A stretch of 64,000 bases of DNA from Ranitomeya imitator (Eukaryota). The notes under the pieces were generated by a model. The model was given only the letters and a program-made list of their open reading frames with translations. It was not told the DNA's origin and did not search any database. The translations under genes and the position numbers were made by a program. Where the stretch lies: contig NC_091288.1 of NCBI RefSeq assembly GCF_032444005.1, forward strand, positions 221,278,001-221,342,000, written 5' to 3'. Of the stretch, positions 2,059 through 58,612 are shown piece by piece. Every line of letters starts with the position of its first letter. Positions within the stretch are counted from its first letter, which is position 1.

Positions 2059-2070
2059 GACCCCTCTGTA

Positions 2071-2272
2071 TACTCACAGTCTCCTTTGTGCTGTATACTC
2101 CCTACCCCTCTGGAGATGAACACTTGCTGCCCGTACTCACAGGAAGTTTAGACTGTACTGGCGGTCGGCCATATTGCTACACCCATGAGGCGAGAGAAGG
2201 CGGGGGCGGCCATGCTGGTACACCCGGGAGCGCGGGCGCAATTCTGGCTCTGATTTTCCCGCGGACACGATG
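2071..2272. promoter_or_regulatory. Probable bidirectional promoter / PPIL3 5' region
   Basis: CpG-rich unique island between two satellites; ETS-like CAGGAAGT 2140-2147; GC box GGGGGCGG 2202-2209; plus-strand ATG|GTGAGT at 2270; minus-strand donors GTGAGTA at 2140-2134 and 2077-2071. Confidence 0.55.
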
Positions 2273-25179: not shown

Positions 25180-25541
25180 CTACGATTTGTAATGGCGGAC
25201 GTGGCGCTGATTGCCGTTATCGGCTAGTCCTGTTTGTCGCCTCAGTTCCTCGATCTCCCTGTCCAGCACCATGTGGTGCATGTACTTGATCAGGAACTTT
25301 TTGCGCTCGGCTCTTTCTCTTACAACGTGGTGCCGCTCTGACATCCGGAAGGTGACGTCCTGCAGAGCATGGTATAGGAACGTCAGGATAGCGGAGTCCT
25401 TGCCGAGGGTCCGCAGGTGGTCTTTCTTGGTGTAGTTTTCTACCAGCACTACCTGCTCCGCACCTGCCAGTCGGAATCGTCTTTCTATCTCCTCTGCACA
25501 CGGATTGTTCTTGTGAGTAATGATAATTATGGGGGAGATAC
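25180..25541 (-). CDS. P-loop gene terminal exon (ISPIIIITHKNNP...VENYTKKDH...ERAERKKFLIKYMHH...HYKS*)
   Basis: cttcttgtcttctcgcag| acceptor; 362 nt; TAG at 25182-25180. Confidence 0.88.
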
Positions 25542-40500: not shown

Positions 40501-42954
40501 AGAACTACAGGACATGTGCGGCTATGTGCCCACCATCTGGAATAGTAGTGCTTTGGACGCAGCATATTTTCACCATGTCCAAACCCCGTTGAATCACACA
40601 GATAAATCCGCATGTGTTTATTGAACAATGCGGATTTACCACATCCAATACATTCTCGTGTCTCAGCTGCAGATTATGGACATGTTGTGGGGCTCATAAT
40701 CCCGCACCGCAATTCTGTTTACTCAGCGTCAAAAATAAGCACAGTGGGCATGGGATCTCTATAAATCCATCCACTGTTCTTTTATCATAGAACACAGCAG
40801 TTTGGATGCTTCATCCAAAAGGCTGATATTCCAAATCGTGGGCACATACCCCAAGACTGGGAATGTCACCCATGTATGACTTGGTGGAGGGGCAGGTGCT
40901 GCAGAGAGCAGGAGTCTGGGACAGGACATTCTCACCCATCTATGACTTGGTGGAGGGACAGGGAGCAGGAGTCTGGGATGGGACGTTCTCACCCTTATGA
41001 CTTGGTAGAGGGCAGGAATCTGGGACAGGATGTTCTCACCCATCTATGACTTGGTAGTCGGGCAGGAGTCTGGAATGGGATGCTCTCACCGATCTAAGAC
41101 TTTGTAGAGAGCAGGAGTCTGGGACAGGACATTCTCACCCATCTATGACTTGATAGAGGGGCAGGAGTCTGGGACAGGATGTTCTCACCCATCTGTGACT
41201 TGGTAGAGGGGCAGGAGTCTGGGACAGGATGTTCTCACCCATCTGTGACTTGGTGGAAGGGCAGGAGTCTGGGACAGGACGTTCTCACCCATCTATGACT
41301 TGGTAAAGAGCAGGAGTCTGGGACAGGACGTTCTCACCCATCTATGACTTGGTAGAGAGCGGGAGTCTGGGACAGGACTTTCTCACCCATCTATGACTTG
41401 GTAGAGAGCGGGTTTCTGGGACAGGACGTTCTCACCCATCTATGACTTGGTAGAGAGCGGGAGTCTGGGACAGGACGTTCTCACCCATCTATGACTTGGT
41501 AGAGAGCGGGAGTCTGGGACAGGACGAAATCACCCATCTATGACTTGGTGGAAGGGCAGGAGTCTGGGACAGGACGATATCACCCATCTATGACTTGGTA
41601 GAGAGCGGGAGTCTGGGACAGGACGTTCTCACCCATCTATGACTTGGTAGAGAGCGGGAGTCTGGGACAGGACGTTCTCACCCATCTATGACTTGGTAGA
41701 GAGCGGGAGTCTGGGACAGGACGTTCTCACCCATCTATGACTTGGTAGAGAGCGGGAGTCTGGGACAGGACGAAATCACCCATCTATGACTTGGTGGAAG
41801 GGCAGGAGTCTGGGACAGGACGATATCACCCATCTATGACTTGGTAGAGAGCGGGAGTCTGGGACAGGACGTTCTCACCCATCTATGACTTGGTAGAGAG
41901 CGGGAGTCTGGGACAGGACGTTGTCACCCATCTATGACTTGGTAGAGAGCGGGAGTCTGGGACAGGACGTTCTCACCCATCTATGACTTGGTAGAGAGCG
42001 GGAGTCTGGGACAGGACGAAATCACCCATCTATGACTTGGTGGAAGGGCAGGAGTCTGGGACAGGACGATATCACCCATCTATGACTTGGTAGAGAGCGG
42101 GAGTCTGGGACAGGACATTCTCACCCATCTATGACTTGGTGGAAGGGCAGGAGTCTGGGACAGGACGAAATCACCCATCTATGACTTGGTGGAGGGGCAG
42201 GAGTCTGGGACAGGACGTTCTCACCCATCTATGACTTGGTGGAAGGGCAGGAGTCTCGGACAGGACAAAATCACCCATCTATGACTTGGTGGAGGGGCAG
42301 GAGTCTCGGACAGGACGAAATCACCCATCTATGACTTGGTGGAGGGGCAGGAGTCTGGGACAGGACGTTCTCACCCATCTATGACTTGGTGGAAGGGCAG
42401 GAGTCTGGGACAGGACGTTCTCACCCATCTATGACTTGGTGGAGGGGCAGGAGTCTGGGACAGGACATTCTCACCCATCTATGACTTGGTGGAGGGGCAG
42501 GAGTCTGGGACAGGACATTCTCACCCATCTATGACTTGGTGGAGGGGCAGGAGTCTGGGACAGGACGTTCTCACCCATCTATGACTTGGTGGAGGGGCAG
42601 TTTCTGCAGAGCAGGAGCTTGGAATAGGACATTCTCACCGAGCTGAGCGTAGACTGTGGGTAATTCCTTGGGGAAAATGTCTCTCATGGGTCTGTTGTCC
42701 GCTATGGTGATGTTGGGGGTGAGCTGGTACGTCTTCCTGCCTCCAGTGGGCTCATTGCTGGCGTGCATGACGTATTCTCCTCCCTCCAGGACGTACTTAC
42801 AGGAGTTGATCAGCAAGGACTTCCCAGATCCTATCAGGCCGAACAGCTGAAGAAGCACCCGCTGGTACCCCTGATTACCGTGCACGCCGCCGTCCAGGCT
42901 GAAGTCATGGATATACTTTAACATTTCGTCCACGGACATCTGCGGATTTTCCAT
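25180..42954 (-). CDS. Uncharacterised P-loop NTPase/GTPase-like protein, IFI44/IFI44L-like, 291 aa; complement(join(25180-25541,39874-39944,40307-40433,42639-42954))
   Basis: Four GT-AG exons (316+127+71+362=876 nt) with phases 1,2,1 all compatible. Walker A GLIGSGKS, DNRP at the G3 position, hydrophobic strand + THK at G4, VENYT; AATAAA 27 nt after the TAG (plus-strand TTTATT 25148-25153). Family assignment is from motif memory, not a search. Confidence 0.85.
25650..26003. mobile_element. T2/Kolobok-type MITE with internal hairpins, interrupted by the LTR element (remainder at 31761-31775)
   Basis: Palindrome GGGCAGAGCAAAGTACTGCAGTGC...GCACTGCAGTACTTTGCTCTGCCC 25659-25745; rejoined end GGGGTGACAGGTTCCCTTT is a typical terminus of these frog MITEs. 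Confidence 0.65.
26004..31760 (-). mobile_element. Full-length Ty3/Gypsy chromovirus (Tf1/sushi-like) LTR retrotransposon
   Basis: LTRs 26004-26785 and 30981-31760 (TG...CA), differing by 3 substitutions and one 2-bp indel by eye; [16 protein letters not shown] next to the 3' LTR; GACAGG duplicated at 25998-26003 and 31761-31766; single gag-pol ORF. Confidence 0.97.
26665..30846 (-). CDS. Gag-Pol polyprotein (Gag, CCHC knuckle, protease, RT, RNase H, integrase, chromodomain)
   Basis: Uninterrupted ~1390-aa ORF: CFYCGDSTHAISDC, FVDSGA, YLDDILIFS, VEVDASEIGAGAVL, H..GHPG...CGIC, HISMDFI, EYIVEKILDSR...YLVKWKGY...SW; first ATG at 30846. Confidence 0.97.
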   Translation of the reverse strand: MDIQGLCSSMDNLVINVQKIQDTIDQKSMLEPRIPIPDLFFGDRTKFLSFKNNCKLFLALKPHSSGNPIQQVLIIISFLRGDPQDWAFSLAPGDPALSSVDAFFLALGLLYDEPNSVDQAEKNLLALCQGQDDIEVYCQKFRKWSVLTQWNESALAALFRKGLSEALKDVMVGFPMPAGLNESLSLAIQIGRRLRERKSVHHLAVLPEVKPEPMQCDRTMTRVERQEYRRLNGLCFYCGDSTHAISDCPKRTKRSARSAVIGTVQSKFLLSITLICSLSSFSVMAFVDSGAALNLMDLDYAKRCGFFLEPLRCPIPLRGIDATPLAKNKPQYWAQLTMCMAPAHQEVIRFLVLHNLHDVVVLGLPWLQTHNPVLDWNSMSVSSWGCQGVHGDVPFLSISSSTPSEVPEFLSDYQDVFEEPKSDALPPHRNCDCAINLIPGSKFPKGRLFNLSVPEHAAMRSYVKESLEKGHIRPSSSPLGAGFFFVAKKDGSLRPCIDYRLLNKITVKFQYPLPLLSDLFARIKGASWFTKIDLRGAYNLVRIRQGDEWKTAFNTPEGHFEYLVMPFGLANAPSVFQSFMHDIFREYLDKFLIVYLDDILIFSDDWESHVKQVRMVFQVLRANSLFVKGSKCLFGVQKVSFLGFIFSPSTIEMDPVKVQAIQDWIQPTSLKSLQKFLGFANFYRRFICNFSSIAKPLTDLTKKGADLVNWSSAAVEAFQELKRCFCSAPVLCQPDVSLPFQVEVDASEIGAGAVLSQRGSDCSVMKPCAFFSRKFSPAERNYDVGNRELLAMKWAFEEWRHWLEGAKHRVVVLTDHKNLTYLESAKRLNPRQARWSLFFARFDFVISYLPGSKNVKADALSRSFVPDSPGLSEPAGILKEGVIVSAISPDLRRVLQKFQANKPDRCPAEKLFVPDRWTNKLISELHCSVLAGHPGIFGTRELVARSFWWPSLSRDVRTFVQSCGICARAKPCCSRASGLLLPLPVPKRPWTHISMDFISDLPVSQKMSVIWVVCDRFSKMVHLVPLAKLPSSSDLVPLFFQHVVRLHGIPENIVSDRGSQFVSRFWRAFCGRMGIDLSFSSAFHPQTNGQTERTNQTLETYLRCFVSADQDDWVSFLPLAEFALNNRASSATLVSPFFCNSGFHPRFSSGQVESSDCPGVDSVVDRLQQIWTQVVDNLTLSQEKAQLFANRRRRVGPRLRVGDLVWLSSRHIPMKVSSPKFKPRFIGPYRISEVLNPVSFRLTLPDSFSIHNVFHRSLLRRYVAPMVPSVEPPAPVLVEGELEYIVEKILDSRVSRRKLQYLVKWKGYAQEDNSWVFASDVHAPDLVRAFHAAHPGRPGGSGEGSVTPPQGGGTVVNSVAEFTPVVTSGTAASELPPSGVLVSSLAASLLNST
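31776..32360. repeat. Diverged direct repeat (~180 bp at 31776 and 32174), probably part of an older LTR-like element
   Basis: ACGGGTCYGGAGCCAACCCARATCAG...GCGTAATTCACTTCAGAGGA...TTATATATTTTACT...ACAAAGTATAAAAAGATAT occurs twice. Confidence 0.6.
33280..39645. repeat. 87/90-bp satellite (GTGAGCTGTGACATCACCTATTGTGAATGG...CAGTCATTGTACAGGAGGAG[GAG])n in P-loop gene intron 3
   Basis: About 70 copies; the 29/30-aa periodic pseudo-ORFs give the period. Confidence 0.97.
39874..39944 (-). CDS. P-loop gene coding exon 3 (GGLQIEEDATEIRSFLRGCRTMT)
   Basis: ttgttatttacag| acceptor; |gtgagt donor; 71 nt, phase 2 to 1. Confidence 0.85.
40307..40433 (-). CDS. P-loop gene coding exon 2 (SFLPLDEMVEKLREYEDLVEKVEETDLAPNSTDLIVPVMVH)
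   Basis: ttctttccttctcag| acceptor; |gtaaat donor; 127 nt, phase 1 to 2. Confidence 0.85.
40860..42640. repeat. 49/50-bp satellite in P-loop gene intron 1 whose unit contains the splice-donor sequence
   Basis: Unit GGACGTTCTCACCCATCTATGACTTGGTAGAGAGCGGGAGTCTGGGACA; the last partial unit overlaps the true donor at 42633-42638. Confidence 0.95.
42639..42954 (-). CDS. P-loop gene coding exon 1 (MENPQMSVDEMLKYIHDF...RVLLQLFGLIGSGKSLLINSCKYV...DNRP...YAQL)
   Basis: ATG at 42954; donor G|gtgaga at 42638; upstream acceptor tttatgtttgcag| at 43013. Confidence 0.88.
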
Positions 42955-42979
42955 TTTCTCAGACACTTTAATGAACAAG

Positions 42980-42991
42980 GAAAGTGAAAGT
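42980..42991. promoter_or_regulatory. IRF-element / ISRE-like motif GAAAGTGAAAGT
   Basis: Exact IRF1/2-type consensus 26 nt upstream of the P-loop gene ATG. Confidence 0.5.
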
Positions 42992-44509
42992 GTTCAGACT
43001 TCAGGGTGCGGCCTGCAAACATAAAGCGTGACGAATAATGAAGGACGCACCCTCTGCCTGCTGAACGGAAGACACCAGCTCGTCATCTGCTGACAACCAG
43101 CCTGTATACATGAGAGGTTGTCAAATGCCACCCGGTGATGACATCACTGATATAATTACATTGTGATATAAATAATGGGAGAAAACTACAAATCAGGAAA
43201 CTTTATTTTAATTTATGTATTTTTTATTTCCATTGTTCACAGACAAACTAGATCTAGCGATAGTGTAATAAACCAAAACCTCTAATAATGTATTCAACTT
43301 ATTACTGCTTCTTTCATGGATTTCGTGAAGCTCGCGATGACTTCGCCACGGGATTAAGTGAAGACGGCGGTTATAGATTCTAATTTATTTTTCTTTTTGT
43401 ACCCAACACCGATCCCTGCTGTATAATAGAATAGCCTCGTCACCTACAGAAGGATCCTTCCATGTGGCGGATTGACTGTTACATCACTGACTGCAGCACC
43501 TGTGTGCTCTGGGTTTTCATATGTGACGGGTCGTGGCGGTTTCCTAAGGTCATATTGGGCGGTGGTTAGAGATGAGCAAATCTGTACGATGTGAGTCACA
43601 ATTGCGTTTAATTTGGATTATCATAGCCTGTATAAAAGCAGAGGCAAGGAATGCAGCGGCAGTTTTGTGCCGAGTCGTGATCGCGAGAAGACATCAGTCA
43701 GAAGAAACAGATTGTGTGTGAGACCACAGTAGTGAAGATTAGTGTGTCAGGAAAGATAAGGAGAGCGCGGACAGCGGTGATTGTAGTGCACTTGCTACTT
43801 GTCAGTTACATTTTTTGATGGTTTATGCAGAAGTAATCCAGCAATATTGCTGAAGTAAAAAAAATCTATTAATGTAATTTAGAAACTGCTGAACAAAGTG
43901 TGCGCGTCACAAATGTCTGAAGCGTGCGCGTCACCTGCTCATATATTAGTCTATTTTGACGTACGTACGTGCCACACCAATACTGGTCATAAAGGAATTG
44001 CTTATTACCGCTTACCTAAAAAACAGCTTTTTACATTAACACCCCCTGTGTAACACTGGCACCGCACCTTCCTGGATCATTTTTACATTTTTATAAAGTT
44101 TCTAAACCCCTCTCGGGGCAGAGTTATTGTTGGTACGGGGTGCCGTCCATTTACCCAGAGTCACATATGTGGAGGTCACTTAGACGTGAAAGTGGTCAGA
44201 TGGGGGCGACGCACGTCTTTCCCGGGCACATGGAGGCCTTGCAGAATTTCACATTCCCGTTAAATCATTTTTTTTTTTTTGAAAAATGTGGCAAAGCCGG
44301 AGAATTCCGAAATCACAAGAGCCACTCGTCTAAATCGGAGATAGTGGACCATCGTTATAGATCGGTTTTATACAATGGCCGATATATGATATTTTAAAAT
44401 ATTTCCAATAAAAGATATATTCCAATTAGTGTTATTCAACCTCCTAGGCTTCGGTTTTGGGTACAGAGCCATCGTTTATCACTGGGTCCTTCCTTCGTAG
44501 ATATTTTCT

Positions 44510-44664
44510 TTATTTCTCCTCCGTTACTTTTTTTTCATATCCGGAGAACAGGAACACGTCGGTGGCCAGTGTCCCGAGCTTGGGCTGATTCTTCAGGATC
44601 TCCTTTTTCCGCTCCTCACTGCTGTCCGTCAGGTCATCGATCACCACAATCACGTTCTTCTTTT
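44510..44664 (-). CDS. TIR-like gene last exon (KKNVIVVIDDLTDSSEERKKEILKNQPKLGTLATDVFLFSGYEKKVTEEK*)
   Basis: atacag| acceptor in phase 1 continues the domain; TAA at 44512-44510. Confidence 0.82.
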
Positions 44665-47600
44665 CTGTATTTCGGGAACATAAGATTCTCTCGTTAGAAC
44701 AAAATTAATTATTATAAAAATGGTAAAAAAAAATATGAGAAATAGAATCAGGAAGGATTAGAGATCGGCGTGAAAAATACTCAGAGAAGAACGAGGCGAC
44801 ACCAGGATCCGGACTCGGGTCTCCATCAATATGCTCATGTATTACAGTAATAGACCAATCAGCAGGGGCCGAATCATTGACCAAAGTAATTAATAGTATA
44901 AGGCCAGTCTCACACGTCCAGATAATTCCGGTACCAGAATTATCCGTGTCCGTGTGCTCACGTGGCACATCAGTGTGCCGCCCGTGTGCCGACTAGGTAC
45001 CACACGCACCGTGCAGGAGACCGTGCTACAGTAAGCGTAAGATATGAAAAATCTTTTTTTTTTTTGGTGTTTAAAAAAAGATCCCTGTCCCCAACCCCCT
45101 CCCACCCCCTGTCCCCCCCCCCCCCCTGCTGTTAATAAAATACTTACCCGGCTCCCTCGCTCCTTCTTCTCGCCGCAGCTTCTCCTGTATGAGCGGTCAC
45201 GTGGTGCCGCCCATTACAGTGATGAATGTGCGGCTCCACCCCTATGGGATGGCGCCAGACAATAACCAAATATTACCATTATATACCATATAGTGATGAT
45301 ACTGATGACTGATCACAACCACTGTAGTGGGGCTGATATCTCCGCCATTCAGTGACCATATCATGGTAATAGTTCACATCAGTGCTCGGCTCATATACAT
45401 CCAGTGGTGCGCATTGATCCTAGTTAATCACTTTCCCTTTTCTTCTCCGTTCGGCCCAGACCGCCATGACCACTTCTCCCATCCATAACTCGGCCCTGCA
45501 AAATGTACCTCGGTTCCTGCTTTTCCCTGATACTGCCACCTGGGCCCTAGACAGTAATATTGCCCCTCGGTGACCTGCACAGTAATTGTACCCTCCTTTT
45601 GTGTCCCACACAATCATTATGTGATTAATTTGGGGACTGATTTATTTTGCCTCATTTAGAAGAACAAAAAGAAGTGAGAGGTCCGACTTACTCAGGGCCG
45701 GCTCCAGGATTACTCAGGCCCACAGCCCGTCTTTCTTTTTGATTTTTCCTCCTCACTGCAGTCATTGTATCAGAGATTTGTTTTTTTTTTGTGATACAAA
45801 TGTTTTCATCATCACCATTTTGATATCTTTATGATCTTTTTTTTACTCAATTTATTAGGAGGCAAAGTGTCCACAAAACGATTCATTTTGGCGTCCACTG
45901 TATGGGGTGGATATTATGATATTTTATTAGTTTGACCACTTACGGACTATAACAAATAAATGATATTGGTCCCCCTTGGGATTGTAATATTGCAGTGTAA
46001 TATAAAACTACCATCCTTCTGTGGCTCGGAGTCATAGGTGTACAAATATGGATGACAGTAGCCTTCACTAGACCCCTTTCCAGTGCCCGATACCTCAGAA
46101 TCGTCAGTCAGTCCGTCCTCTCCCACGGTCCCATCACTATCTCTTACCAAGCCTTGAGGACAGATATTGTAGCTCCTCGTCATACAGAGAGTCTGTGACA
46201 TCCGTGAGATTGACTCGTCCTCTGTTCTGGGTATGATACAGGATCCCAAAGTCACACCTCGACACGCTACTCGAGAACTCGGAGGACCCGTTGTTGGTGA
46301 TACAACAAGGCCGGACGCTCTTTACAAAGGACTCTGATGTCAGTCTTGTCTTCAACCATTCATATTCACTCTCTGCTGACCTCGAAAATATCCCCACTTT
46401 TACCTTGTGAAAATAAGAATATAAAAGCCATTGTAACTATAGAAAGTTAATCACTGCATAGAAAGTCAGTCACTGACTGCTTCTTATTGTCTTGACGTCT
46501 CTGAGTCTCTTTCTTAAAAATGTTAAAAATGTCATGGCACATTTTTTAACTGGTGTAAAGTGGACACTACAAGGATCTGTACTGGGAGCAGTGAAAACCA
46601 CCAGGATCTATACTGGGAACAGAGGAGACCACATTGATCTGTACTGAGAACAGAGGAGACCACATTGATCTGTACTGGCAGCAGAGGAGACCACATTGAT
46701 CTGTACTGGGAACTGAGGAGACCACATTGATCTGTACTGGGAACAGAGGAGACCACATTGATCTGTACTGGGAACAGAGGAGACCACATTGATCTGTACT
46801 GGGAACAGAGGAGACCACATTGATCTGTACTGGGAACAGAGGAGACCACATTGATCTGTACTGGGAACAGAGGAGACCACATTGATCTGTACTGGGAACA
46901 GAGGAGACCACATTGATCTGTACTGGGAACAGAGGAGACCACATTGATCTGTACTGGGAACAGAGGAGACCACATTGATCTGTACTGAGAACAGAGGAGA
47001 CCACATTGATCTGTACTGGGAGCAGAGGAGACCACATTGATCTGTACTGGGAACAGAGGAGACCACATTGATCTGTACTGGGAACAGAGGAGACCACATT
47101 GATCTGTACTGGGAGCAGAGGAAACCACATTGATCTGTACTGAGAGCAGAGGACACCACAAGAATCCTGACTGGGAACAGTGAGATCCACAATGATCTAT
47201 ACTGTGAGCAAATGGAACCACAAGGATCTCTATGGGATTTAGTTCTGAGCTCCACATTCTAAAACTTATATAGAATAGCTGGAGAAGGTTCAGGATTGGG
47301 CAACTAAGCCCCATGTACCAATGGGATGTGAGGTATCTCCTATAATGAACAGATTCTAACAAACTAAATTTGTCAAATTAAAAAAAATCAGCTCCTTCTC
47401 TCCCGTCTCCTCGCACCTGTCCATGCCGGTTCCTCCACCACCCGGTCTTCCTAAGTGCTCCCTTTGACCTTCTTTGATTACAAATACTTTCAGGTCTTCT
47501 GTCCTCTCAGACAGCCACCAGGCCTCATGGAGTTACATAGGGCGTAACTCGTCTGACATTAAGGACCTGCGTCATGTCTCACACAGTTGACTGCTTGGGA

Positions 47601-50600
47601 TTCCACTACTGCCATAAGAGAAAATGGGAAGGCCAAGGCGAGGAGGACCAGATGGGTGGGTCGGGTATCGGGAGGACCTATGTGAGCTCAGTACAAGGGT
47701 TTATTGTTCTCTAACCCTCATCTCCATCCTGTATCAAAGTTAAAAACCCCAAAGTTCCCATTTGAAAATAATGAACTTCTCCACTTACCTTATTGGGAGA
47801 TTTCCCTAAAAAATAGAACAAAAGAAGATTTTAATAAGTTTAATATTGAGCTGGAGGCAAAGTAAGAAAAGACAATTACTTTTCATCGTTTTTCGCATCT
47901 GACGCACTTTTTCTTCAAATGAAGAAGTTTTTCCGTAGCTAAATTCACCTACAAGAAATAGAAACAAAAAGATAAAGACGAAAGTGAGGACTATCGTGTA
48001 GAATGGAGGTGGATCAGTCTGGTACTGGGGGAGAATGCGGACAAGACACCGACAAGACATGAGACAATATACAGAGAAGACGAGGAGAAAACACGGACAG
48101 GACATGGACAAGATGCGGACAAGACACGGACAGAACATGGACAAGACACAGACAAGACACGGACTGGACACCGACAAGACATGAGACAATATACAGAGAA
48201 GACGAGGATAAAACACGGACAGGACATGGACAAGACACGGACAGGACATGGACAAGACACACAAGACACGGACTGGACACAGACAAGACATGAGAATATA
48301 CAGAGAAGACGAGGATAAAACAGACAGGACACGGACAAGACACGGATAAGACAAGGACAAGACACAGACAAGATGCGGACAAGATGCGGACAAGACACAG
48401 ATAAGACAAGGACAAGACACAGACAAGATGTGGACAAGATGCGGACAAGACACAGACAAGATGCAGACAAGACACGGACAGGACATGGACAAGACACGAA
48501 CAAGACAAGGACAAGACACAGACAGGACACAGACAAGATGCGGACAAGGCATGAGACATAACACTGACAACATACAAGTCGTCTCCTGTGGTCAGCAATG
48601 TAAGCAGCAATCAGTCCTGCTGTACAGGAGCTGGGGTGTGTGTAATTGTGTCTGTAGGATGATTTTCAGGTGCGTCTTTGGAATTGTGTATGAATGTGAT
48701 ATAATTGTGCATGTGTTCGTGTATCCAGATATTTTTGGCTACATACAGAACCAGTCAAAAGTCCTGACACCCCGGCTGCTGTAGTGGTTTTCCTTGCTCT
48801 TATTGGAATGTGCACACTGTAGATTCAGACTGAAGCAGCAAAACTAAGAAGGAAGCAAGAAGTAAGGAAACATATGGGGCACAAATAGAGTATGTGTTTA
48901 CATTCACTTGGAATAAATCACCAGAACTGGCACCATGAATGCACCCACCACACCATTACACCTCCCCTCCATTCTCCACGCACACATCCATCTCACCATC
49001 AATGCACCCTTCCATCTCATCATCAACATACCTGTCACATCATTACACCTCCCCTCCATGCTCCACATACCATTCCATCTCACCATCAACACACCTGACA
49101 CACCATTACACCTCCCCTCCATGCTCCACGCACCCCACCATCTCACCACCAACATACCCATCACACCATTACACCTCCCCTCCATGCTCCACGCACCCCA
49201 CCATCTCACCACCAACATACCCATCACACCATTACACCTCCCCTCCATGCTCCACGCACCCCACCATCTCACCACCAACATACCCATCACACCATTACAC
49301 CTCCCCTCCATGCTCCACGCACCCCACCATCTCACCACCAACATACCCATCACACCATTACACCTCCCCTCCATGCTCCACGCACCCCACCATCTCACCA
49401 CCAACATACCCATCACACCATTACACCTCCCCTCCATGCTCCACACACCCCTCCATCTTACCATCAACATACCCATCACACCATTACACCTCCCCTCCAT
49501 GCTCCACGCACCCCACCATCTCACCACCAACATACCCATCACACCATTACACCTCCCCTCCATGCTCCACACACCCCTCCATCTTACCATCAACATACCC
49601 ATTACACCTCCCCTCCATGCTCCACGCACCCCACCATCTCACCACCAACATACCCATCACACCATTACACCTCCCCTCCATGCTCCACGCACCCCACCAT
49701 CTCACCATCAACACACCCGCCACACCATTACACCTCCTCCATGCTCACACCCCTCCATCTTAACATCAACACACCCGCCACACCATTACACCTCCTCCAT
49801 GCTCACACCCCTCCATCTTAACATCAACACACCCGCCACACCATTACACCTCCTCCATGCTCACACCCCTCCATCTTAACATCAACACACCCGCCACACC
49901 ATTACACCTCCTCCATGCTCCACATACCACTCCATCTTAACATCAACACACCCGCCACACCATTACACCTCCCCTCCATGCTCCACACACCCCTCCATCT
50001 TACCATCAACCTACCCATCACACCATTACACCTCCCCTCCATGCTCCACACACCCCACCATTTCACCATCAACCTACCCATCACATCATTACACCTCCCC
50101 TCCATGCTCCACACACCCCACCATCTCACCATCAACCTACCCATCACACCATTACACCTCCACTCCATGCTCCACACACCCCTCCATCTTACCATCAACG
50201 CACCCGCCACACCATTACACCTCCCCTCCATGCTCCACACACCCCTCCATCTTACCATCAACGCACCCGCCACACCATTACACCTCCTCCATGCTCCACA
50301 TACCACTCCATCTTACCATCAACACACCCGTCACACCATTACACCTCCCCTCCATGCTCCATGCACCCTATCATCTCACCATCAATAAATCCGTTACATT
50401 ATTATTTATTTATATAGCACCATTGATTCCATGGTGCTGTACATGAGAAGGGGTTACATCAAAATACAGATATCACTTACAGTAAACTAACAATGACGGA
50501 CTGATACAGAGGGGCGAGGACCCTGCCCTTGTGGGCTTACATTCTACAGGATTATGGTGAAGGAGACAATAGGTTGAGGGTTGCAGGAGCACCGGTGTAG

Positions 50601-53103
50601 AGGTGGACGTGTGGTCATTGCAGGTTGTCAGTTTATTTGAAGAGGTGGGATTCAGGTACCATCTGAAGGATCCAAATGTGGATAATCGGATGTGTTGGGT
50701 CCACACCAGTACACCTCCCGTCCATGCTCCACATACCCCTCCATCAAGACACCTGTCACATCATTACACCTCCCCTCTATGCTTCACGCACCCTTCCATC
50801 TCACCACCAAAGCACCCGCAACCCCATTACACCTCTCCATAAACACACCCATCACACCTCCCCTCCATGCTTCATGCACCCCTCCATCTTACCATCAACG
50901 CACCCGCCACACCATTTCTGCATTGTACAAAGACATGGTGGTGGCTCCTCAGAGCACAGAACAGATTTCCACTGATCCAATGTTCATTTCTTGTGTTGCT
51001 CTGTCCATTCACATCTCTTCTTGTTTGCAGTCCATAGCAGTAACTTCTTTCCAGCAGTTTGATCATAAAGTCTTTCTCACAGTCTCCTCTGTACGGTAGA
51101 TGTTGTTACTTGATGTCTGCACATCATTTCTGAGGGCTGTTATCTTAGGTGAATGTCAATTTGTGCTTTTCTTTAGGCTGATAACTTTGATGAACTTATC
51201 CTCTGCAGCAGAGGTCATTCTTGTCCTTCCTTTCCTTGAGTTGTCCCCAAGAGAGTTTGTTTAATCATAGCGATTAATGGTTTTCATAACTGCACTTGCG
51301 GATACCTTCACGATTCTTGTAACTTTCCCAGATTGACTGACCTTCATGTCTTACAGTGATGACGGACAGTGGTTTCTCTTAGTCTGGTGTTTCTTGTCAT
51401 GTTCCGGCTTAGCACAGTTGTGGAATAGTCTCAGCACTGTATGGAGCTGTGCACCGACACCGCCTCTGCAAAACATCCCTTATGGTCACAAACTGATCAT
51501 TGGATGCCATTCCAGGTGCCACCTGATGAAGCTGCTGGAGATAATGTCCAGGGGGTGTAACGTTATCATCAGGAGGACAATCGGGAGGAACCTGAGGTGT
51601 AACGTACTCTGTTTCTTCAGTGTGTCTCCTTGTTTCCATGTTTCTTCCTTCCCAGTTTTGCTTCCTTTAGTCTGAATCTACAATGTGCACATACTGTACG
51701 TGAACGTCGCCTTTCCTCCTATAATTATGTATCCGCGTATTTATGTCCCAACCTCTGTGGCGTTACAGACAGATCAGCTGTTATTAACCCTTAGTTTTCT
51801 TTGTACGTTTTGATCAGATGTTCTTTTTCTCACCTTCCCTCCATTATCACTTACTTTGTGCTGACTGCGGTGGCTCCGGGGACTCGGACCTCCTTTGTGG
51901 AGTCTTCTCCGAAGGTGCAACTTGGTTTTCTGTGATGGACAGAAGTGTGAGTAGTGCAGGTTCATAGATGCCTCCCCCCAAATTCTGACTATGACCCAAG
52001 TTATAACTTGTCAGAGAAGTATGCCCCCCATATACAGTGCCAGACTCCCTCATAATAGTGCTCTGTATTAATATCACAGATCTTCCTCAATAAACAATGT
52101 CAGCTTGTAGAGAACCTGTCCACCCTACCGATGTGTAAACCCTTGTATCCCTCATAATGTCACAATTCCAGGCGTCTGGAGCGGACAGATCCTCCTCCAT
52201 CATTGTACCCATGACATATTCATCTACATTGTAATGATCACAGTTTGCTATCGGGTAGGAAGGGATTTTACCATCAGTTCACCAAGTCCTGCTCATACAG
52301 CTGAGGTCTTGTCACAGTGTATCAGTGAAGCAATGCGTCTCTTCTGTGTGGACTTTGGTCCAATCTCTCTTACCCGATACACTGTGACGCCCATCAGCTG
52401 TGTGAACAGGAACTGCCCCACTCATGGACGAAAAGCAGAGATCCTGAAAATGCTGAGAAACTTGAGATAAAAAGTCCCTTATAAAGCTGCAGGACTGTCC
52501 ACGGTAGATGACGGCGGCGGGTTCTCGGCTGAGGTCAGTGGACCGGTGTAGGGGGATTTATCTCCACCATTTGCGCATTTTTCCTGGGATGTGCAGACAT
52601 TTCTCCCGGGCGCCGTTCAGTCTTACGTTACATTGTCGCGGTGATTTTGGCTTCTTACCTGGCAGCGGCCGATGCTTCCTGCAATAAAAGACAAGTAGAT
52701 AAAAGCCGGGCCCTTTATGTCTGACGTGTGGCCCCAGCGGAGGAGATCTATCATCAGTGTCACAGATGGAGCAATTAACGGGAGGATGAAGATAGCGGGA
52801 ATTGATGATACTCGCCCTTGGTAAGTTCTAAGGTTATGGTGGAGGCGGTGCGACCCCAGAGCAGCACCCGGTGCGGCACACGGCCACGTCTACAGTGAGC
52901 CACGGAACAGAGACTCGGCCTCCCCGGATCCCGGAGGGAACGTCCACATTGTTACACCAGGTCATGGGTCACATTATGGAGGACTGGATACTGTTCAGGG
53001 GGAGGAGAGGTTTCCCTACCAGATGACCATTTACCCATCATCGCCACGGGAATCTACTTACTGGTTTCTTTGGAAATTAAACCAGCTGATTGACTTCTTC
53101 TTT
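44510..53103 (-). CDS. Uncharacterised protein with C-terminal TIR-like (Rossmann-like beta/alpha) domain, 5'-partial, at least 210 aa; complement(join(44510-44664,46148-46403,47789-47805,47880-47948,51855-51929,52659-52678,53062-53103))
   Basis: Seven exons (42,20,75,69,17,256,155 nt), each flanked by a polypyrimidine-AG acceptor and (except the last) a GTAA donor, with phases 2,1,1,1,0,1 all compatible and no internal stop; AATAAA overlaps the TAA. Start codon not located. Confidence 0.78.
44901..45250. mobile_element. T2/Kolobok-type MITE fragment
   Basis: Begins AGGCCAGTCTCACACGTC; shares GAGCGGTCACGTGG...GCGGCTCCACCCCTATG with the element at 55690-56300. Confidence 0.6.
46148..46403 (-). 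CDS. TIR-like gene main domain exon (VKVGIFSRSAESEYEWLKTRL...[36 protein letters not shown])
   Basis: ttcttattttcacaag| acceptor; G|gtaaga donor; 256 nt open. Confidence 0.85.
46600..47150. repeat. 31-bp minisatellite (CTGTACTGGGAACAGAGGAGACCACATTGAT)n
   Basis: Unit read directly; intronic in the TIR-like gene. Confidence 0.93.
48040..48560. repeat. Degenerate 11-mer-based repeat (ACAAGACACGG/ACAGGACATGG)
   Basis: Low-complexity A/C/G array. Confidence 0.85.
48930..50910. repeat. 63-bp C-rich satellite, interrupted at ~50386-50700
   Basis: 21-aa periodic pseudo-ORF HHYTSPPCSTHPTISPPTYPS; the array resumes after the insert. Confidence 0.92.
50386..50700 (-). mobile_element. L2-type LINE 3' end inserted in the 63-bp satellite
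   Basis: TTATTTATTTATATAGCACC...TGGTGCTGTAC tail hairpin and GCCCTTGTGGGCTTACATTCTACA resemble the L2 tail at 53216. Confidence 0.65.
51020..51400 (-). mobile_element. Degenerate Tc1 transposase N-terminal fragment
   Basis: Minus strand reads MKVSQSGK...SAVMKTINRYD...KGRTRMTSAAEDKFIKVISL, the paired-like HTH region of vertebrate Tc1 elements. Confidence 0.75.
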
Positions 53104-53215
53104 CTGCCAAAAACACCAAAATAAATAACCATGACTATCACCCCTATTATCTGATCGCTCCTCATCAGAACCATCATCATCCTCGCCATCACTTTCATAT
53201 CACCATCGTTCTGAT

Positions 53216-54160
53216 AATAATAATCTCTATATAGCGCCAACATATTCCACAGCGCTTTACAGTTTAACAGTTTCAAACACAAAAGTCATAAGTAACAACG
53301 TTAACAATAGAATAATTGAAGCACAATAAGCCGCCCCTGCTCGTGAGAGCTTACAATCTACAATGAGGTGGGGGAGATACAAAGTACAGGTGTGTATTTA
53401 CAATGATGTATTTACAATGAGGGTCCGGCCATCTTCAGGGGTTGGGGAAAAGATGGAGATAGTGAATGGGCTACACACAAACATAACATAACTTTGATTA
53501 GTGAACGTGATAGGCCGCTCTGAACAAATGTGTTTTGAGCGAGCGCCTAAAACTATGCAAGTTGTGGATGGTCCTAATATCTTGGGGTAGAGCATTCCAG
53601 AGGATTGACGCAGCACGGGAGAAGTCTTGGAGTCGGGAGTGGGAGGTACGGATTAGTGCAGAGGTTAGTCGGAAGTCATCTGCAGATCGCAGCGGTCGGT
53701 TAGGCCGATAGACAGAAATGAGGGAGGAGATGTAAGGGGGCCGCACTGTGGAGAGCTTTGTGGGGGAGAACAAGTACTTTGAATTGTATCCTGTAATGAA
53801 TGGGCAGCCAGTGTAACGACTGGTGAAGAGCGGACGCGTCCAAGTAACAATTAGCCAGATGGACGACCCTGGCTGCTGCATTAAGGATGGACTGGAGAGG
53901 GGAAAGTCGCGTGAGGGGGAGGCCAATTAATAGAGCATTGCAGTAGTCCAGGCGGGAGTGGATCAGGGCGACAGTGAGGGGTTTTTGTTATCTCCATGCT
54001 GAGAAAAGGACGGATTCTAGAGATGTTCTTTAGGTGTAAGCGGCACGAGCGGGTAAGAGATTGTATAGCGCGCCTGCTGCCGGGGTGTTATTATGGTGCC
54101 ACCCACGGAGAGGGAAATGTCAGATTTAGGGAGGTTAGTAGATGGAGGGAGGTTAGTAGA
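53216..54160 (-). mobile_element. 5'-truncated L2-clade LINE with 7-bp target-site duplication TTCTGAT
   Basis: C-terminal peptide PYISSLISVYRPNRPLRSADD...LQDFSRAASILWNALPQDIR...FRRSLKTHLFRAAY; (ATT)n tail; TTCTGAT at 53209-53215 and 54161-54167. Confidence 0.9.
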
Positions 54161-54669
54161 TTCTGATCTCCACTCTCATTGTCGTCCTCCTCATTATTAG
54201 CCGCACGCGGATTCTTATACTCTTCATATATTTCTCAGAACAGAAGGTTCCACAAGAAAAAAGCTGAAGCAGAGCAACATTGATTCCACTCTTCCATTGT
54301 TTAATGCCACTCTCCCATTATTTTCTACCTCTCCTCATTGTTTTATCACCTTCCTACATTGTTTAATGTCCATCCCTCATTGTTTCCTGCCCTCACCCAG
54401 TATTTCATGACCTTCCTCTATACTGTCATGCCCCTCGCCCAATGTTTCATGGCCCTCCTTTAGTTTCATGCCTCTAGTCCATTCTTTAATGCTGTTACAC
54501 TGTGTTACCAAGGTTTTGTCCCTCGGTCCTCGGACAATTGTGAGTGTTCCTGATAGATTTTTTCATGCTGATTTCAGAAATGACTTCAGATTTTTCCTAT
54601 CACGTAAGGTTTCTGAGAAATGATACCAAACATTATAATATTCTGTTATAAATCTAAAAACTCATATAT

Positions 54670-56303: not shown

Positions 56304-57590
56304 AGGGTTAGGGGTCAGACACTGACATAGGGGTTAGGGGTCAGACACGGACGTAGGGTTTGAGTTAGTGGTAAGACACTGACTTAGGGTTTGGTTAGTG
56401 GTTGGATGCTGACTTAGGGTTTGAGATAGTGGTAAGACACTGACTGAGGGTTTAGGTTAGTGGTCGGACACTGAGTTATGGTTTGGGTTAGTAGACAGAC
56501 ACTGACTTAGGGTTTGAGTTAGTGGACGGACACTGACTTAGGGCTTGATTAGTGTTCAGACACTGACTGAGGGTTTGGGTTAGTGGTCGAATACTGACTT
56601 AGGGTTTGGGTTAGTGGTCGAATGCTGACTTAGGGTTTGGGTTAGTGGTCGAATGCTGACTTAGGGTTTGGGTTAGTGGTTGGATACTAACTTAGAGTTT
56701 GGGTTAGTGGTCGGATACTGACTTAGGATTTGGGTTAGTGGTTGGATGCTGACTGAGGGTTTGTGTTAATGGTCGGACACTGACTTAGGGTTTGGGTTAG
56801 TGGTCGGATACTGACTGAGGGTTTGTGTTAATGGTCGGACACTGAGTTATGGTTTGGGATAGTGGTCGGACACTGACTTAGGGTTTGGGTTAGTGGTCGG
56901 ATACTGACTGAGGGTTTGTGTTAATGGTCGGACACTGAGTTATGGTTTGGGATAGTGGTCGGACACTGACTGAGGGTTTGGGTTAGTGGTCGAATGCTGA
57001 CTTAGGGTTTGGGTGAGTGGTCGGATACTGACTTAGGGTTTGGGTTACTGGTCAGATACTGACTTAGGGTTTGGGTTAGTGGTCGGATACTGACTGAGGG
57101 TTTGTGTTAATGGTCGGACACTGAGTTATGGTTTGGGATAGTGGTCGGACACTGACTGAGGGTTTGGGTTAGTGGTCGAATGCTGACTTAGGGCTTGGGT
57201 TAGTGGTCGGATACGGACTTAGGGTTTGGGTTACTGGTCAGATACTGACTTAGGGTTTGGGTTAGTGGTTGGATGCTGACTTAGGGTTTGGGTTAATGGT
57301 CGGACACTGATGTAGGGTTTGGTTAGTGGTCGGACACTGACTGAGGGTTTGGGTTAGTGGTCCGATACTGACTGAGGGTTTGGGTTAATGGTCGGACACT
57401 GAATTATGGTTTGGGTTAGTGGTCGGACACTGACTTAGGGTTTGGGTTAGTGGCCGGACACTGACGTAGGGCTTGGGTTAGTGGTAGGACACTGAGTTAT
57501 GGTTTGGGTTAGTGGTCAGACACTGACTGAGGGTTTGGGTTAGTCTTTGGACACTGGCATAGGGTTTGGGTTAGTGGTAGGACGCTGATT
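56302..57590. repeat. ~31-bp satellite containing telomere-like hexamers (CTGACTTAGGGTTTGGGTTAGTGGTCGGAYA)n
   Basis: TTAGGG-TTTGGG-TTAGTG in most units; starts with TTAGGGTTAGGG at 56302. Confidence 0.9.
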
Positions 57591-58559
57591 TATGATGCTA
57601 TGGCTCCTGGAAGAAGAGGGAAAATCTACAAAAGGGCAAGAACAAAAAGTGTCATCTGCGAGAAGGGAGAAAGGAAGAGGCTGAACTCGTCAATCACTGT
57701 AGCATCGGGTCTTCCCTGCACTGATCATAGAAGTCACTGTGTAACAATGTATCTGTGTTACTATGTAACAATGTATCTGTGTTACCATGTAACAATGTAT
57801 CTGTGTTACTATGTATCGGGATTAACTCTCTGCCTCCCAGTATTCTTGGAATGATTTTGCTCCCTTTCTATTGAGCTGTGGTGTCTTATAAGTGCCGATA
57901 TCTTTGTACATCAGTGCCCGTCGTCTGTCAGGTCAGCACGGCATCTTAGATGTTGATTGTACCTTTTAAAGGGGTTGTCCAGGATTACAAAGCCATGGTT
58001 AAATAGTTCAAGAAACAGCGCCCCCCTGACTACAGGTTGTGTGCGGTATTACAGCTAAGTGTCATTCATTTTCAGGGCGCTGATAAGAACAGACACCAGG
58101 GGTGTAAATACAATTGGTTCCGGGGTTGTAGTCGTACCCGGGCCCCGGAGACGCAGGGGCCCAATATAAAAAGACAATGCTATTAAGGACTTGCCCCATT
58201 GGGGACCATCAGCTTGAAGTGAGGCTGCTGCCAGACACAACCTGTGGACAAGTGGGGGCGCTGTGTCCGGAAGATACATGTTGTTCTAATACTATTTCCG
58301 CGTGTTTTCTCGTTGTGTCCGTTGTTTCTCCGTATTTGCACGGATGTTCGGCGCGCTCTCGTCGTCCGCTGTCCGCTATTATCACGAACCTGTCCGCTTT
58401 GGATCTCGCAGCGTTTCCTGACATCCTGACGTTTTCCTTCTGTCGTTGTCGCCTCCTGATTCCTGTGACCCCTTTAATTCTTCAGGATGTCGCTCCGTGT
58501 TTCGGGGCGCAGCGACCTCCTCTCCCTCCGATGAGATCAGATTGTGGCAGATTTGTAAT

Positions 58560-58612
58560 TTTTCACCTTTCTGGTTTCATTAGAAGACAAAGTGTCTTTC
58601 ACTTTCATTTCC
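58560..58612. promoter_or_regulatory. Clustered ISRE/IRF-like motifs (minus strand GGAAATGAAAGTGAAAG and GAAACCAGAAAGGTGAAA)
   Basis: Three GAAA repeats at 2-nt spacing, 58596-58612, in unique DNA upstream of the TIR-like gene. Confidence 0.45.

What the first reader, a model, noticed from the sequence alone, without database searches (positions are those of the whole stretch)
44510..53103. Unannotated-looking multi-exon gene ending in a TIR-like domain with a candidate catalytic Glu
Seen: seven exons, including 17- and 20-nt micro-exons, splice in frame into a basic, Pro/Ser-rich linker followed by a compact ~135-aa domain. The ORF track shows only scraps of it. Inference: the domain alternates five hydrophobic strands with helices (VKVGIFSR / EYEWLKTRL / VRPCCIT / EFSSSVSRC / DFGILYHT / [11 protein letters not shown] / NVIVVIDDL / EERKKEILK / DVFLFS). 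That is the betaA-E flavodoxin-like order of TIR domains, and SLYDEEL falls where TIR NADases carry SxWCxxEL. Established: TIR domains of SARM1, plant NLRs and bacterial ThsB/CBASS effectors cleave NAD+ using this Glu. I recall this motif set from expanded uncharacterised frog protein families with no known function. A nucleoside-deoxyribosyltransferase-like fold is an alternative.
Basis: partly seen in the sequence, partly recalled or inferred. Interest (0 to 1): 0.82.

Follow-up and report, generated by a model that had tools for sequence, protein, structure and literature searches.

The report
Frog interferon-type gene with TIR-like domain
This is a real, expressed and already annotated poison-frog gene whose small C-terminal domain belongs to a frog-expanded, uncharacterised immune-linked family that most resembles bacterial NAD-cleaving TIR domains and keeps their key glutamate, although the kinship is only moderately supported.

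Summary
The seven exons, including the 20-nt and 17-nt micro-exons, splice exactly as described.

- The gene starts 5.3 kb further upstream, at a coding exon at 58424-58390.
- The gene is annotated. The window is Ranitomeya imitator, XP_069591209 (222 aa) and XP_069591210 (208 aa), "uncharacterized protein".

RNA contigs from four runs in three studies carry the E0-E1-E2-E3-E4 joins.

The family has about 360 clusters at 50% identity. All named members are frogs, and no Pfam model exists.

The nearest named structural neighbours are bacterial Cap12/Pycsar TIR domains, but G domains and deoxyribosyltransferases score about as well. Profile-profile alignment to Cap12 TIR is weak (P about 1e-3). 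That Glu is kept in 149 of 150 single-domain members.

Fusions to CARD, a VLIG GTPase and P2RX7_C, ISRE-like promoter elements and an adjacent IFI44-like gene all point to innate immunity.

Verdict: a TIR-like reading is plausible, and NADase activity is untested. The scan had already noted this same stretch as a two-gene module (s1-288164).

The parts
58595..58612 (-). ISRE/IRF-type element GGAAATGAAAGTGAAAGA just upstream of the earliest transcript evidence
   Evidence: Sequence read. The pattern GAAANNGAAAS occurs 4 times in the window against 0.28 expected. The same 11-mer sits at the 5' end of the neighbouring IFI44-like gene (42980-42990).
58390..58424 (-). E0: first coding exon (ATG; MSGNAARSKAD + 2 nt). 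The 5'UTR extends upstream to at least about 58575.
   Evidence: Six-frame search, sequence, exact translation into P0232/P0151. The RNA loose end at 53106 is the reverse complement of this exon.
53062..53103 (-). E1: 42-nt in-frame cassette exon (KKKSISWFNFQRN). Present in isoform X1, skipped in X2.
   Evidence: RNA contigs in four runs join it to E2 and E3.
52659..52678 (-). E2: 20-nt micro-exon (KHRPLP plus split codons)
   Evidence: It is the only stop-free AG-N20-GT candidate in the intron. It is conserved in Phyllobates P0047 (QKNRALAE). Sixteen of its 20 letters lie between the E3 and E1 pieces of RNA contigs in all four runs.
51855..51929 (-). E3: 75-nt exon (NQVAPSEKTPQRRSESPEPPQSAQ)
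   Evidence: tblastn with P0047/P0151. RNA contig pieces lie on 51853-51932.
47880..47948 (-). E4: 69-nt exon (EFSYGKTSSFEEKVRQMRKTMK). It encodes the conserved helix that precedes the domain.
   Evidence: The RNA loose end at 51853 matches its start. AlphaFold2 gives a helix at residues 68-80, with pLDDT up to 93.
47789..47805 (-). E5: 17-nt micro-exon (RKSPNK with a split codon)
   Evidence: Sequence with tag|...|gtaagt sites. Needed for the exact translation. Paralogues have RKPPRP or RRLPNQ at this place. RNA contig lengths fit, but the letters were not shown.
46148..46403 (-). E6: first 85 residues of the domain (beta1 to alpha3). The conserved Glu (P0232 E163; E84 in domain numbering) is codon 46175-46173.
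44510..44664 (-). E7: last 50 residues of the domain (beta4 to alpha5) and the stop codon (44512-44510)

Best explanation
This is an intact, transcribed gene of Ranitomeya imitator spanning about 14 kb, with eight coding exons.

Shown:
- The exon chain, its splicing and an alternative cassette exon.
- A 222-aa product made of a disordered basic N-terminus (1-66), a conserved helix (68-80) and a 135-aa five-stranded alpha/beta domain.
- Membership of a very large frog gene family that has no Pfam model.

Inferred:
- The domain is a divergent member of the TIR superfamily, nearest to the bacterial Cap12/Pycsar-effector TIR type.
- Its pocket is formed by residues at the C-terminal ends of the strands: S14/R15, N44, Y63/H64, the G69-R70-x-N72-x-T74-D75 loop, Y81/D82/E84 and D102/D103.
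- E84 (E163 of the protein) sits where TIR and deoxyribosyltransferase-type enzymes carry the catalytic Glu.

Most likely mechanism: after interferon-type induction the protein is brought together, either at membranes or through tandem copies or fused CARD/GTPase modules. It then binds and probably cleaves NAD+ or a related nucleotide through that Glu, acting as an antiviral effector or signal generator.
For: Gene and splicing.

Fold: AlphaFold2 pLDDT 95.4 with the order b-a-b-a-b-a-b-a-b-a.

TIR neighbours:
- The top Foldseek PDB hit is TIR-STING 9lmq.
- The top two SwissProt-AFDB hits, and rank 6, are Cap12 TIRs, E 1.2e-4 to 1.9e-3, with up to 24% identity.
- The best named ESM Atlas neighbour is a PF10137 cluster, TM 0.65/0.70.
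- An independent ESMFold model of a paralogue cluster has three PF10137 rows and no GTPase among its neighbours.

Sequence:
- Three family members hit PF10137 weakly (best E 0.014).
- hhalign against a Pfam-confirmed PF10137 alignment gives P 1.3e-3. Against an independently drawn set it gives P 4e-3, in the same register.
- That register is FGILYHT to FAVVLLT, E84 to the invariant Glu of FELGYF, and LGK.NV to LGR.RV.
- Reversed controls score 8-9 against 26.

Catalytic equivalence: ElSTING E86A is catalytically dead (PMC12421889). A Glu between betaC and betaD is the TIR hallmark, and a Ser/Thr ends betaC (PMC7075850). The frog family has S/T65 in 125 of 132 sequences.

Constraint: E84 is kept in 149/150 single-domain proteins but only 148/180 domains of tandem proteins, where whole-motif degenerate copies occur.

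Immune context:
- Fusions to CARD, P2RX7_C and URGCP/VLIG GTPase.
- ISRE-like elements at this gene and at the adjacent IFI44-like P-loop gene.
- Membrane-anchor-like tails or Cys clusters in paralogues.
- UniRef names for P0066 and P0083 read 'TIR domain-containing protein', although neither has a Pfam TIR.
Against: - No curated TIR model is matched above threshold.
- hhalign probability is only 8-18%, and 4 of 150 block-shuffled controls reach the real score.
- Foldseek E-values never fall below 1e-4 outside the family, and TM is about 0.5.
- Language-model features point weakly to CENP-M and AIG1 rather than TIR.
- The beta2-alpha2 (BB) loop has only about 5 residues (I-S-N-x-G) and lacks the aromatic NAD-contacting residues described for ElSTING (W34, F39). 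The long conserved loop follows strand 3 instead.
- Interferon induction is inferred from motifs and neighbours, not measured.
- Automatic names within the family disagree: TIR, NB-ARC, Flavodoxin.
Confidence: 0.45

Rival explanations
1. The domain has the same ancestry (TIR-like) but is not an enzyme. It works as a homotypic adaptor or scaffold, as in MyD88 or TLR TIRs. It assembles signalling complexes through tandem copies and fused CARD or GTPase modules, and the conserved Glu and loop serve folding or partner binding.
For: - The TIR survey notes that the conserved Glu is frequent in non-enzymatic TIR groups too and probably has a role beyond catalysis (PMC7075850).
- The BB-loop aromatics of the NADases are absent.
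- A CARD fusion in Ascaphus resembles adaptor architectures.
- Up to six tandem copies occur in one protein.
Against: About fifteen polar residues at the strand ends are more than 85-95% conserved across a fast-expanding family. That is more typical of a ligand or active site than of a variable protein interface. The Glu is nearly invariant in single-domain proteins.
Confidence: 0.22
2. The domain is a degenerate G domain: a pseudo-GTPase in the manner of CENP-M or IRGQ, perhaps derived from AIG1/GIMAP- or IFI44-like neighbours. It has lost the P-loop and the antiparallel strand and acts as a regulatory or dimerisation module of immune GTPases.
For: - ESM feature neighbours are CENP-M (0.58-0.63) and AIG1 clusters.
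- The domain is fused to a VLIG GTPase and lies beside an IFI44-like GTPase gene.
- A sea-urchin-type relative is named as an AIG1-domain protein.
- Weak Pfam hits of the VIVVIDDL.D strand to Walker-B regions of KAP/STAND NTPases.
Against: - The beta1-alpha1 loop has three residues and no GxxxxGK[ST]. There is no antiparallel strand or switch I.
- No G-domain Pfam family is among the recurrent weak hits.
- hhalign against the neighbouring IFI44-like exons finds nothing (P 0.14 and 0.41).
- Neither ESM Atlas structure search lists a GTPase.
- GTPases fall below Cap12 TIRs in Foldseek E-value.
Confidence: 0.18
3. The domain is a nucleoside 2-deoxyribosyltransferase-like or other flavodoxin-like enzyme. 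It would act on nucleosides or nucleotides other than NAD+ and would have no specific kinship to TIR.
For: - BcmB CMP N-glycosidase appears among the Foldseek hits.
- Viral NDT and CMP-hydrolase hits.
- DUF4062 neighbours.
- The Glu after strand 3 is shared with this enzyme class (established knowledge).
Against: These hits always rank below Cap12 TIRs in Foldseek and ESM Atlas. No sequence-level signal to these families was seen.
Confidence: 0.1

Closest known systems
CAP12/Pycsar effector TIR domain (Pfam PF10137; e.g. TIR-STING, PDB 9lmq)
   Same: - A compact alpha/beta domain of about 130 aa.
- It is the best named structural neighbour in four searches.
- The local motifs align in register: F-A/G-h-h-h-h-T at strand 3, then E-L-x-Y-x4-L-G-K/R-x2-V from helix 3 into strand 4. 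The Glu falls on the invariant Glu of that motif, which by numbering I take to be the catalytic one.
- It is an immune effector that is activated by assembly.
   Different: - No significant sequence match.
- The frog domain has five strands, whereas four are described for ElSTING.
- The BB loop is short and lacks W/F.
- A conserved 16-residue loop follows strand 3.
- The strand-1 motif is GIFSRS rather than VFIVHGHD.
- Strand 4 ends in IDDL rather than E-I-P-S-D.
- It is eukaryotic, multi-exon, and often membrane-anchored or tandemly repeated.
Eukaryotic TIR NADases (SARM1; plant TNL TIRs such as RPS4, PDB 4c6t)
   Same: - The five beta-alpha units.
- An h-F-h-S motif at the end of strand 1.
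- A Ser/Thr at the end of strand 3.
- A Glu at the start of helix 3.
   Different: - 9% identity.
- The motif is DSLYDxEL, not SxWCxxEL (aromatic at -3, not -4).
- No aromatic three residues after strand 3.
- No Pfam TIR or TIR_2 match.
Pseudo-GTPase and small G domains (CENP-M, IRGQ, AIG1/GIMAP)
   Different: No P-loop, no switch regions and no G3/G4/G5 motifs. There is a conserved acidic/polar pocket that pseudo-GTPases do not need.
Nucleoside 2-deoxyribosyltransferase / BcmB-MilB N-glycosidases
   Different: Ranked below TIRs in every Foldseek-type search. No shared sequence motifs were detected.

Membership tests
TIR superfamily (Pfam TIR, TIR_2, CAP12-PCTIR_TIR, ThsB-type) | Three-layer alpha/beta/alpha fold with 4-5 parallel strands alternating with helices | tested here: met
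   AlphaFold2 (pLDDT 95.4) gives E8-14, H18-29, E34-41, H47-55, E59-65, H82-92, E97-104, H109-125, E128-133 and H134-142. The strand order itself could not be read because no coordinates were available.
TIR superfamily (Pfam TIR, TIR_2, CAP12-PCTIR_TIR, ThsB-type) | Significant match to a curated TIR sequence model | tested here: not met
   No Pfam hit for the window's domain or for full proteins. Only 3 of 132 members touch PF10137, with best E 0.014 against a gathering score of 24.7 bits. Nothing in PADLOC.
TIR superfamily (Pfam TIR, TIR_2, CAP12-PCTIR_TIR, ThsB-type) | Profile-profile or structural similarity that stands clear of other folds | tested here: inconclusive
   - hhalign Prob 18% (P 1.3e-3) and 8.5% (P 4e-3), in the same register. 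Block-shuffle control: 4/150 reach the score.
- Cap12 TIR tops the Foldseek and ESM Atlas lists, but at E 1e-4 to 1e-3.
TIR superfamily (Pfam TIR, TIR_2, CAP12-PCTIR_TIR, ThsB-type) | Ser/Thr closing strand C and a conserved Glu between strands C and D (PMC7075850) | tested here: met
   S/T65 in 125/132 and E84 in 116/132 of the diverse set. E84 in 149/150 single-domain proteins. The aromatic three residues after strand C that the survey describes is absent.
TIR NADases (SARM1, plant TNL, Cap12/TIR-STING, ThsB) | Catalytic Glu at the equivalent position | tested here: met
   hhalign aligns E84 with the invariant Glu of FELGYF in PF10137. ElSTING E86 is catalytic. The equivalence of E86 with that motif's Glu is my inference from numbering offsets.
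TIR NADases (SARM1, plant TNL, Cap12/TIR-STING, ThsB) | BB loop carrying aromatic NAD-contacting residues and forming the head-to-tail composite site | tested here: not met
   The loop between strand 2 and helix 2 is about 5 residues (I42-S/T43-N44-x-G46) with no conserved aromatic. ElSTING uses W34 and F39 there.
TIR NADases (SARM1, plant TNL, Cap12/TIR-STING, ThsB) | NAD+ cleavage dependent on the Glu | not testable with these tools
   Needs a biochemical assay.
P-loop GTPases / G domains | Walker A/G1 loop GxxxxGK[ST] after strand 1, plus the G3 and G4 motifs | tested here: not met
   Strand 1 is followed by S-R-S and a three-residue loop. There is no DxxG or NKxD. No G-domain Pfam family appears among the recurrent weak hits.
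P-loop GTPases / G domains | Antiparallel strand 2 and switch I between helix 1 and the next parallel strand | tested here: not met
   Helix 1 (18-29) runs directly into strand 2 (34-41).
Nucleoside 2-deoxyribosyltransferase-like | Match to the family's sequence or structure above other flavodoxin-like folds | tested here: inconclusive

The most novel reading that the evidence does not exclude
Frogs carry a large, so far undescribed family (hundreds of genes across the order) of interferon-linked, often membrane-anchored enzymes. They would descend from the same stock as bacterial Cap12/Pycsar TIR effectors and use the conserved Glu to cleave NAD+ or another nucleotide. That would make them a vertebrate counterpart of bacterial abortive-infection effectors, with relatives in echinoderms and cnidarians, wired to CARD, VLIG-GTPase and P2RX7-ballast modules.
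Probability: 0.28. Interest if true: 0.8.

Novelty: new variant of a known kind. Interest (0 to 1): 0.6.

Why it matters
SARM1 is the only animal TIR that my sources name as having NADase activity. Most vertebrate TIRs are treated as adaptors.

A second vertebrate lineage of TIR-like domains would be a new branch of nucleotide-based antiviral immunity in animals. This one is hugely expanded in frogs, keeps the catalytic Glu, sits next to interferon-type genes and is fused to CARD and immune GTPases. It would also be relevant to amphibian defence against ranaviruses and chytrid fungus.

Even if the domain is not catalytic, the family deserves a domain model of its own. It has about 360 clusters at 50% identity, up to six copies per protein and no Pfam entry. 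Current automatic names for its members (TIR, NB-ARC, flavodoxin, golgin-like, CENP-E-like) contradict one another.

Tried and rejected
- Pfam scans of the exons, of full proteins and of all 132 aligned domains gave no family above threshold. The recurrent weak hits to KAP, STAND and AAA_16 models cover only the VIVVIDDL.D strand. I read them as Walker-B look-alikes.
- PADLOC gave nothing consistent.
- A profile search of PDB sequences gave caspase-3 p12 at E 0.012. I rejected it: the p12 subunit holds only the last two strands of the caspase fold, and no caspase appears in any structure search.
- hhalign against the two large exons of the neighbouring IFI44-like gene gave no similarity.
- The viral structure library held no homologue, and no ranavirus-type copy.
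- A word-based homologue search with the family profile returned frogs only, so non-frog relatives could not be fetched to deepen the profile.
- Three literature searches found no description of this family.
- I could not obtain model coordinates or HH-suite/Pfam databases in the sandbox. Strand order, pocket geometry and a proper HHpred run remain undone.
- No control alignment of G domains was available for a symmetric hhalign test.
Full report
**The observation**

They read VKVGIF...SSRL | EKKNVIVVIDDL...TEEK*.

A phmmer search with the 85-aa exon against 1.84 billion representatives found 360 clusters at E <= 1e-3, of which 337 were at <= 1e-10. There are up to six matched stretches per protein.

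The closest full-length relatives let me place the other exons by tblastn and by eye:
- 51929-51855
- 47948-47880
- the 17-nt exon 47805-47789, flanked tag|GGAAATCTCCCAATAAG|gtaagt and encoding RKSPNK where paralogues have RKPPRP or RRLPNQ

A scan of the next intron for AG-N20-GT windows that stay open in frame gave a single candidate, 52678-52659. It reads QKHRPLPE where Phyllobates has QKNRALAE.

**Identity of the gene**

Protein P0151 (Ranitomeya imitator XP_069591210.1, "uncharacterized protein isoform X2", 208 aa) is identical to the window's exons. Its cluster mate P0232 (XP_069591209.1, isoform X1, 222 aa) adds 14 residues.

Concatenating 58424-58390, 53103-53062, 52678-52659, 51929-51855, 47948-47880, 47805-47789, 46403-46148 and 44664-44510 translates exactly into P0232. 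Leaving out 53103-53062 gives exactly P0151. Every intron is GT-AG.

Its first exon is a 42-nt in-frame cassette, the true first coding exon was missed, and the gene is annotated in RefSeq. An older, frame-shifted R. imitator model (P0157) runs through the 5'UTR and the same exon chain.

**RNA evidence**

RNA runs hold 15-30% of the sampled words of 44480-46420, which is what the exons alone would give.

I laid four runs from three studies on 50400-54200. Each has one contig of about 500-530 nt (depth 21-69) that lies on 51853-51932 and then jumps to 53061. Sixteen letters lie between the two pieces. Their reverse complement, AAGCATCGGCCGCTGC, is the core of the 20-nt micro-exon.

The contigs' loose ends match the start of exon 47948-47880 and the end of exon 58424-58390. 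Their lengths imply that they continue about 315 nt downstream, which equals E4 + E5 + 229 nt of E6.

The 17-nt exon and the E6/E7 junction were not shown letter by letter.

**The protein**

The first 86 residues hold 21 K+R and 21 P+S. AlphaFold2 on the full length leaves residues 1-66 at pLDDT about 50 and predicts a helix at 68-80 (the conserved SSFEEKxxxMR segment of exon E4), followed by the domain.

With a 132-sequence alignment of family domains, all under 62% identical to one another, the domain model reaches pLDDT 95.4 and pTM 0.88.

**What fold family**

No search gives a match that stands alone.

- **Foldseek against the PDB:** nothing below E 1e-3. TIR-STING (9lmq) is first, followed by a mixture of G domains, CheY receivers, flavodoxins, type II dehydroquinases, BcmB, and SIGIRR and SARM1 TIRs.
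- **AlphaFold-SwissProt:** the top two hits and rank 6 are Cap12 TIRs, E 1.2e-4 to 1.9e-3, one with 24% identity.
- **AFDB clusters:** family members come first. Relatives at 17-30% identity and TM 0.74-0.82 follow, and from their accession prefixes I believe they are elephant shark, sea urchin, coral and lancelet proteins (from memory, not checked). Then come DUF4062 and a ThsB TIR-like entry.
- **ESM Atlas with my model:** the best named neighbour is a PF10137 (CAP12/Pycsar TIR) cluster, TM 0.65/0.70, then DUF4062 and receivers.
- **ESM Atlas with an ESMFold model of a paralogue cluster:** three PF10137 rows and no GTPase.
- **Language-model features:** these lean weakly to CENP-M and AIG1.

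Without its antiparallel strand, a G-domain core has the same strand order as a flavodoxin-like fold. Topology alone therefore cannot decide.

**A sequence-level test**

I fetched real PF10137 genes from bacterial genomes by their NVIFELGYF motif. I confirmed three of them with Pfam at E 1e-30 to 1e-40 and aligned 53 domains.

hhalign of the frog profile against this alignment gives probability 18%, P 1.3e-3, over 59 columns. The register is:
- FGILYHT on FAVVLLT (strand 3, ending in the Thr)
- E84 on the invariant Glu of FELGYF
- LGK.NV on LGR.RV, leading into strand 4

Reversed controls score 8-9 against 26. Block-shuffled controls average 19.3 (sd 3.1), and 4 of 150 reach 26. A second PF10137 set, drawn without reference to the motif, gives P 4e-3 in the same register.

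In ElSTING the catalytic residue is E86, and E86A is catalytically dead (PMC12421889). By numbering offsets, this is the Glu of that motif (my inference). The TIR survey describes a Ser/Thr closing strand C and a Glu between strands C and D as the general TIR marks (PMC7075850). The frog family has both.

It lacks the NADase-type BB loop: strand 2 to helix 2 is I-S-N-x-G, with no aromatic residue.

**Conservation**

About fifteen polar residues at the C-terminal ends of the strands are 80-97% conserved: S14, R15, N44, Y63, H64, G69, R70, N72, T74, Y81, D82, E84, D102, D103 and Q119.

E84 is present in 149 of 150 domains from single-domain proteins, but in only 148 of 180 domains from tandem proteins. 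In the tandem proteins some copies have lost the whole loop-and-Glu motif set. This is the pattern expected of a functional site that can be spared in extra copies.

**Context**

All named family members are anurans, from Ascaphus and Bombina to dendrobatids.

Domain fusions include:
- a C-terminal CARD in Ascaphus
- the P2RX7 intracellular domain in Bombina
- the URGCP/VLIG GTPase in Bombina, a protein named "interferon-induced very large GTPase 1"
- kinesin motors in Xenopus and Discoglossus

Many single-domain paralogues end in a hydrophobic tail or begin with Cys clusters.

In the window, the element GGAAATGAAAGTGAAAGA lies just upstream of the 5'UTR. The same 11-mer lies at 42980-42990, directly upstream of a minus-strand IFI44-like gene whose first coding ORF carries GLIGSGKS. 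The degenerate pattern occurs 4 times against 0.28 expected.

**Verdict**

The gene model is confirmed and extended. The TIR-like reading is the best single explanation (about 0.45 including a nucleotide-directed role). Next come a non-catalytic TIR-like adaptor, a degenerate G domain and another flavodoxin-like enzyme. Nothing here shows NADase activity.

The family is undescribed in the literature I could search and has no Pfam model, though a few members already carry automatic "TIR domain-containing" names.

Noticed in passing
window 25180-42990, minus strand: An IFI44-like P-loop gene lies directly downstream in the same orientation. Its first coding ORF is at 42571-42978 (…LFGLIGSGKSLL…) and its last at 25180-25641. 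The ISRE-like 11-mer GAAAGTGAAAG sits at 42980-42990, at its 5' end. This agrees with the earlier notes s1-288397 and s1-288164.
   Followed up: partly
window 26665-30870, minus strand: An uninterrupted 1401-aa ORF has retrotransposon hallmarks by eye: a zinc knuckle, protease, reverse-transcriptase YLDD, integrase and a chromodomain-like end. It lies inside the IFI44-like gene's span. It was not scanned against Pfam.
   Followed up: no
window 46574-47237, 48038-48548, 49005-50385, 56331-57592: The introns of the gene are filled with tandem arrays: 31 nt x 21.5, 11 nt x 47, 63 nt x 22 and 31 nt x 41. They produce the long spurious ORFs seen in the ORF list.
   Followed up: partly
window 33700-39650, plus strand: A long satellite gives repeated ORFs of the form VLSVIVQEEEVSCDITYCEWWILCYLLYIE over about 6 kb.
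   Followed up: no
window 1-16000: A G+C-rich stretch (0.60-0.73) with strong strand skew. Its repetitive reading frames (…[16 protein letters not shown]…) turned up as chance tblastn matches.
   Followed up: no
window 50400-50650 and 53194-54200: RNA contig depth is in the hundreds to tens of thousands, with many short pieces at 95-99% identity. This looks like dispersed repeats transcribed from many loci, not part of this gene.
   Followed up: no
P0046 (Ascaphus truei XP_075441296.1), P0008 (Bombina bombina XP_053550898.1): Family members with three to five copies of the domain, fused to a CARD (E 2.4e-17) or to the P2RX7 intracellular domain (E 2.5e-11).
   Followed up: partly
AFDB cluster entries: Automatic names within one family contradict each other: TIR domain-containing, NB-ARC domain-containing, Flavodoxin domain-containing and AIG1-type G domain-containing. 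NCBI names include golgin-like, CENP-E-like, eIF3A-like and ice nucleation protein-like.
   Followed up: no
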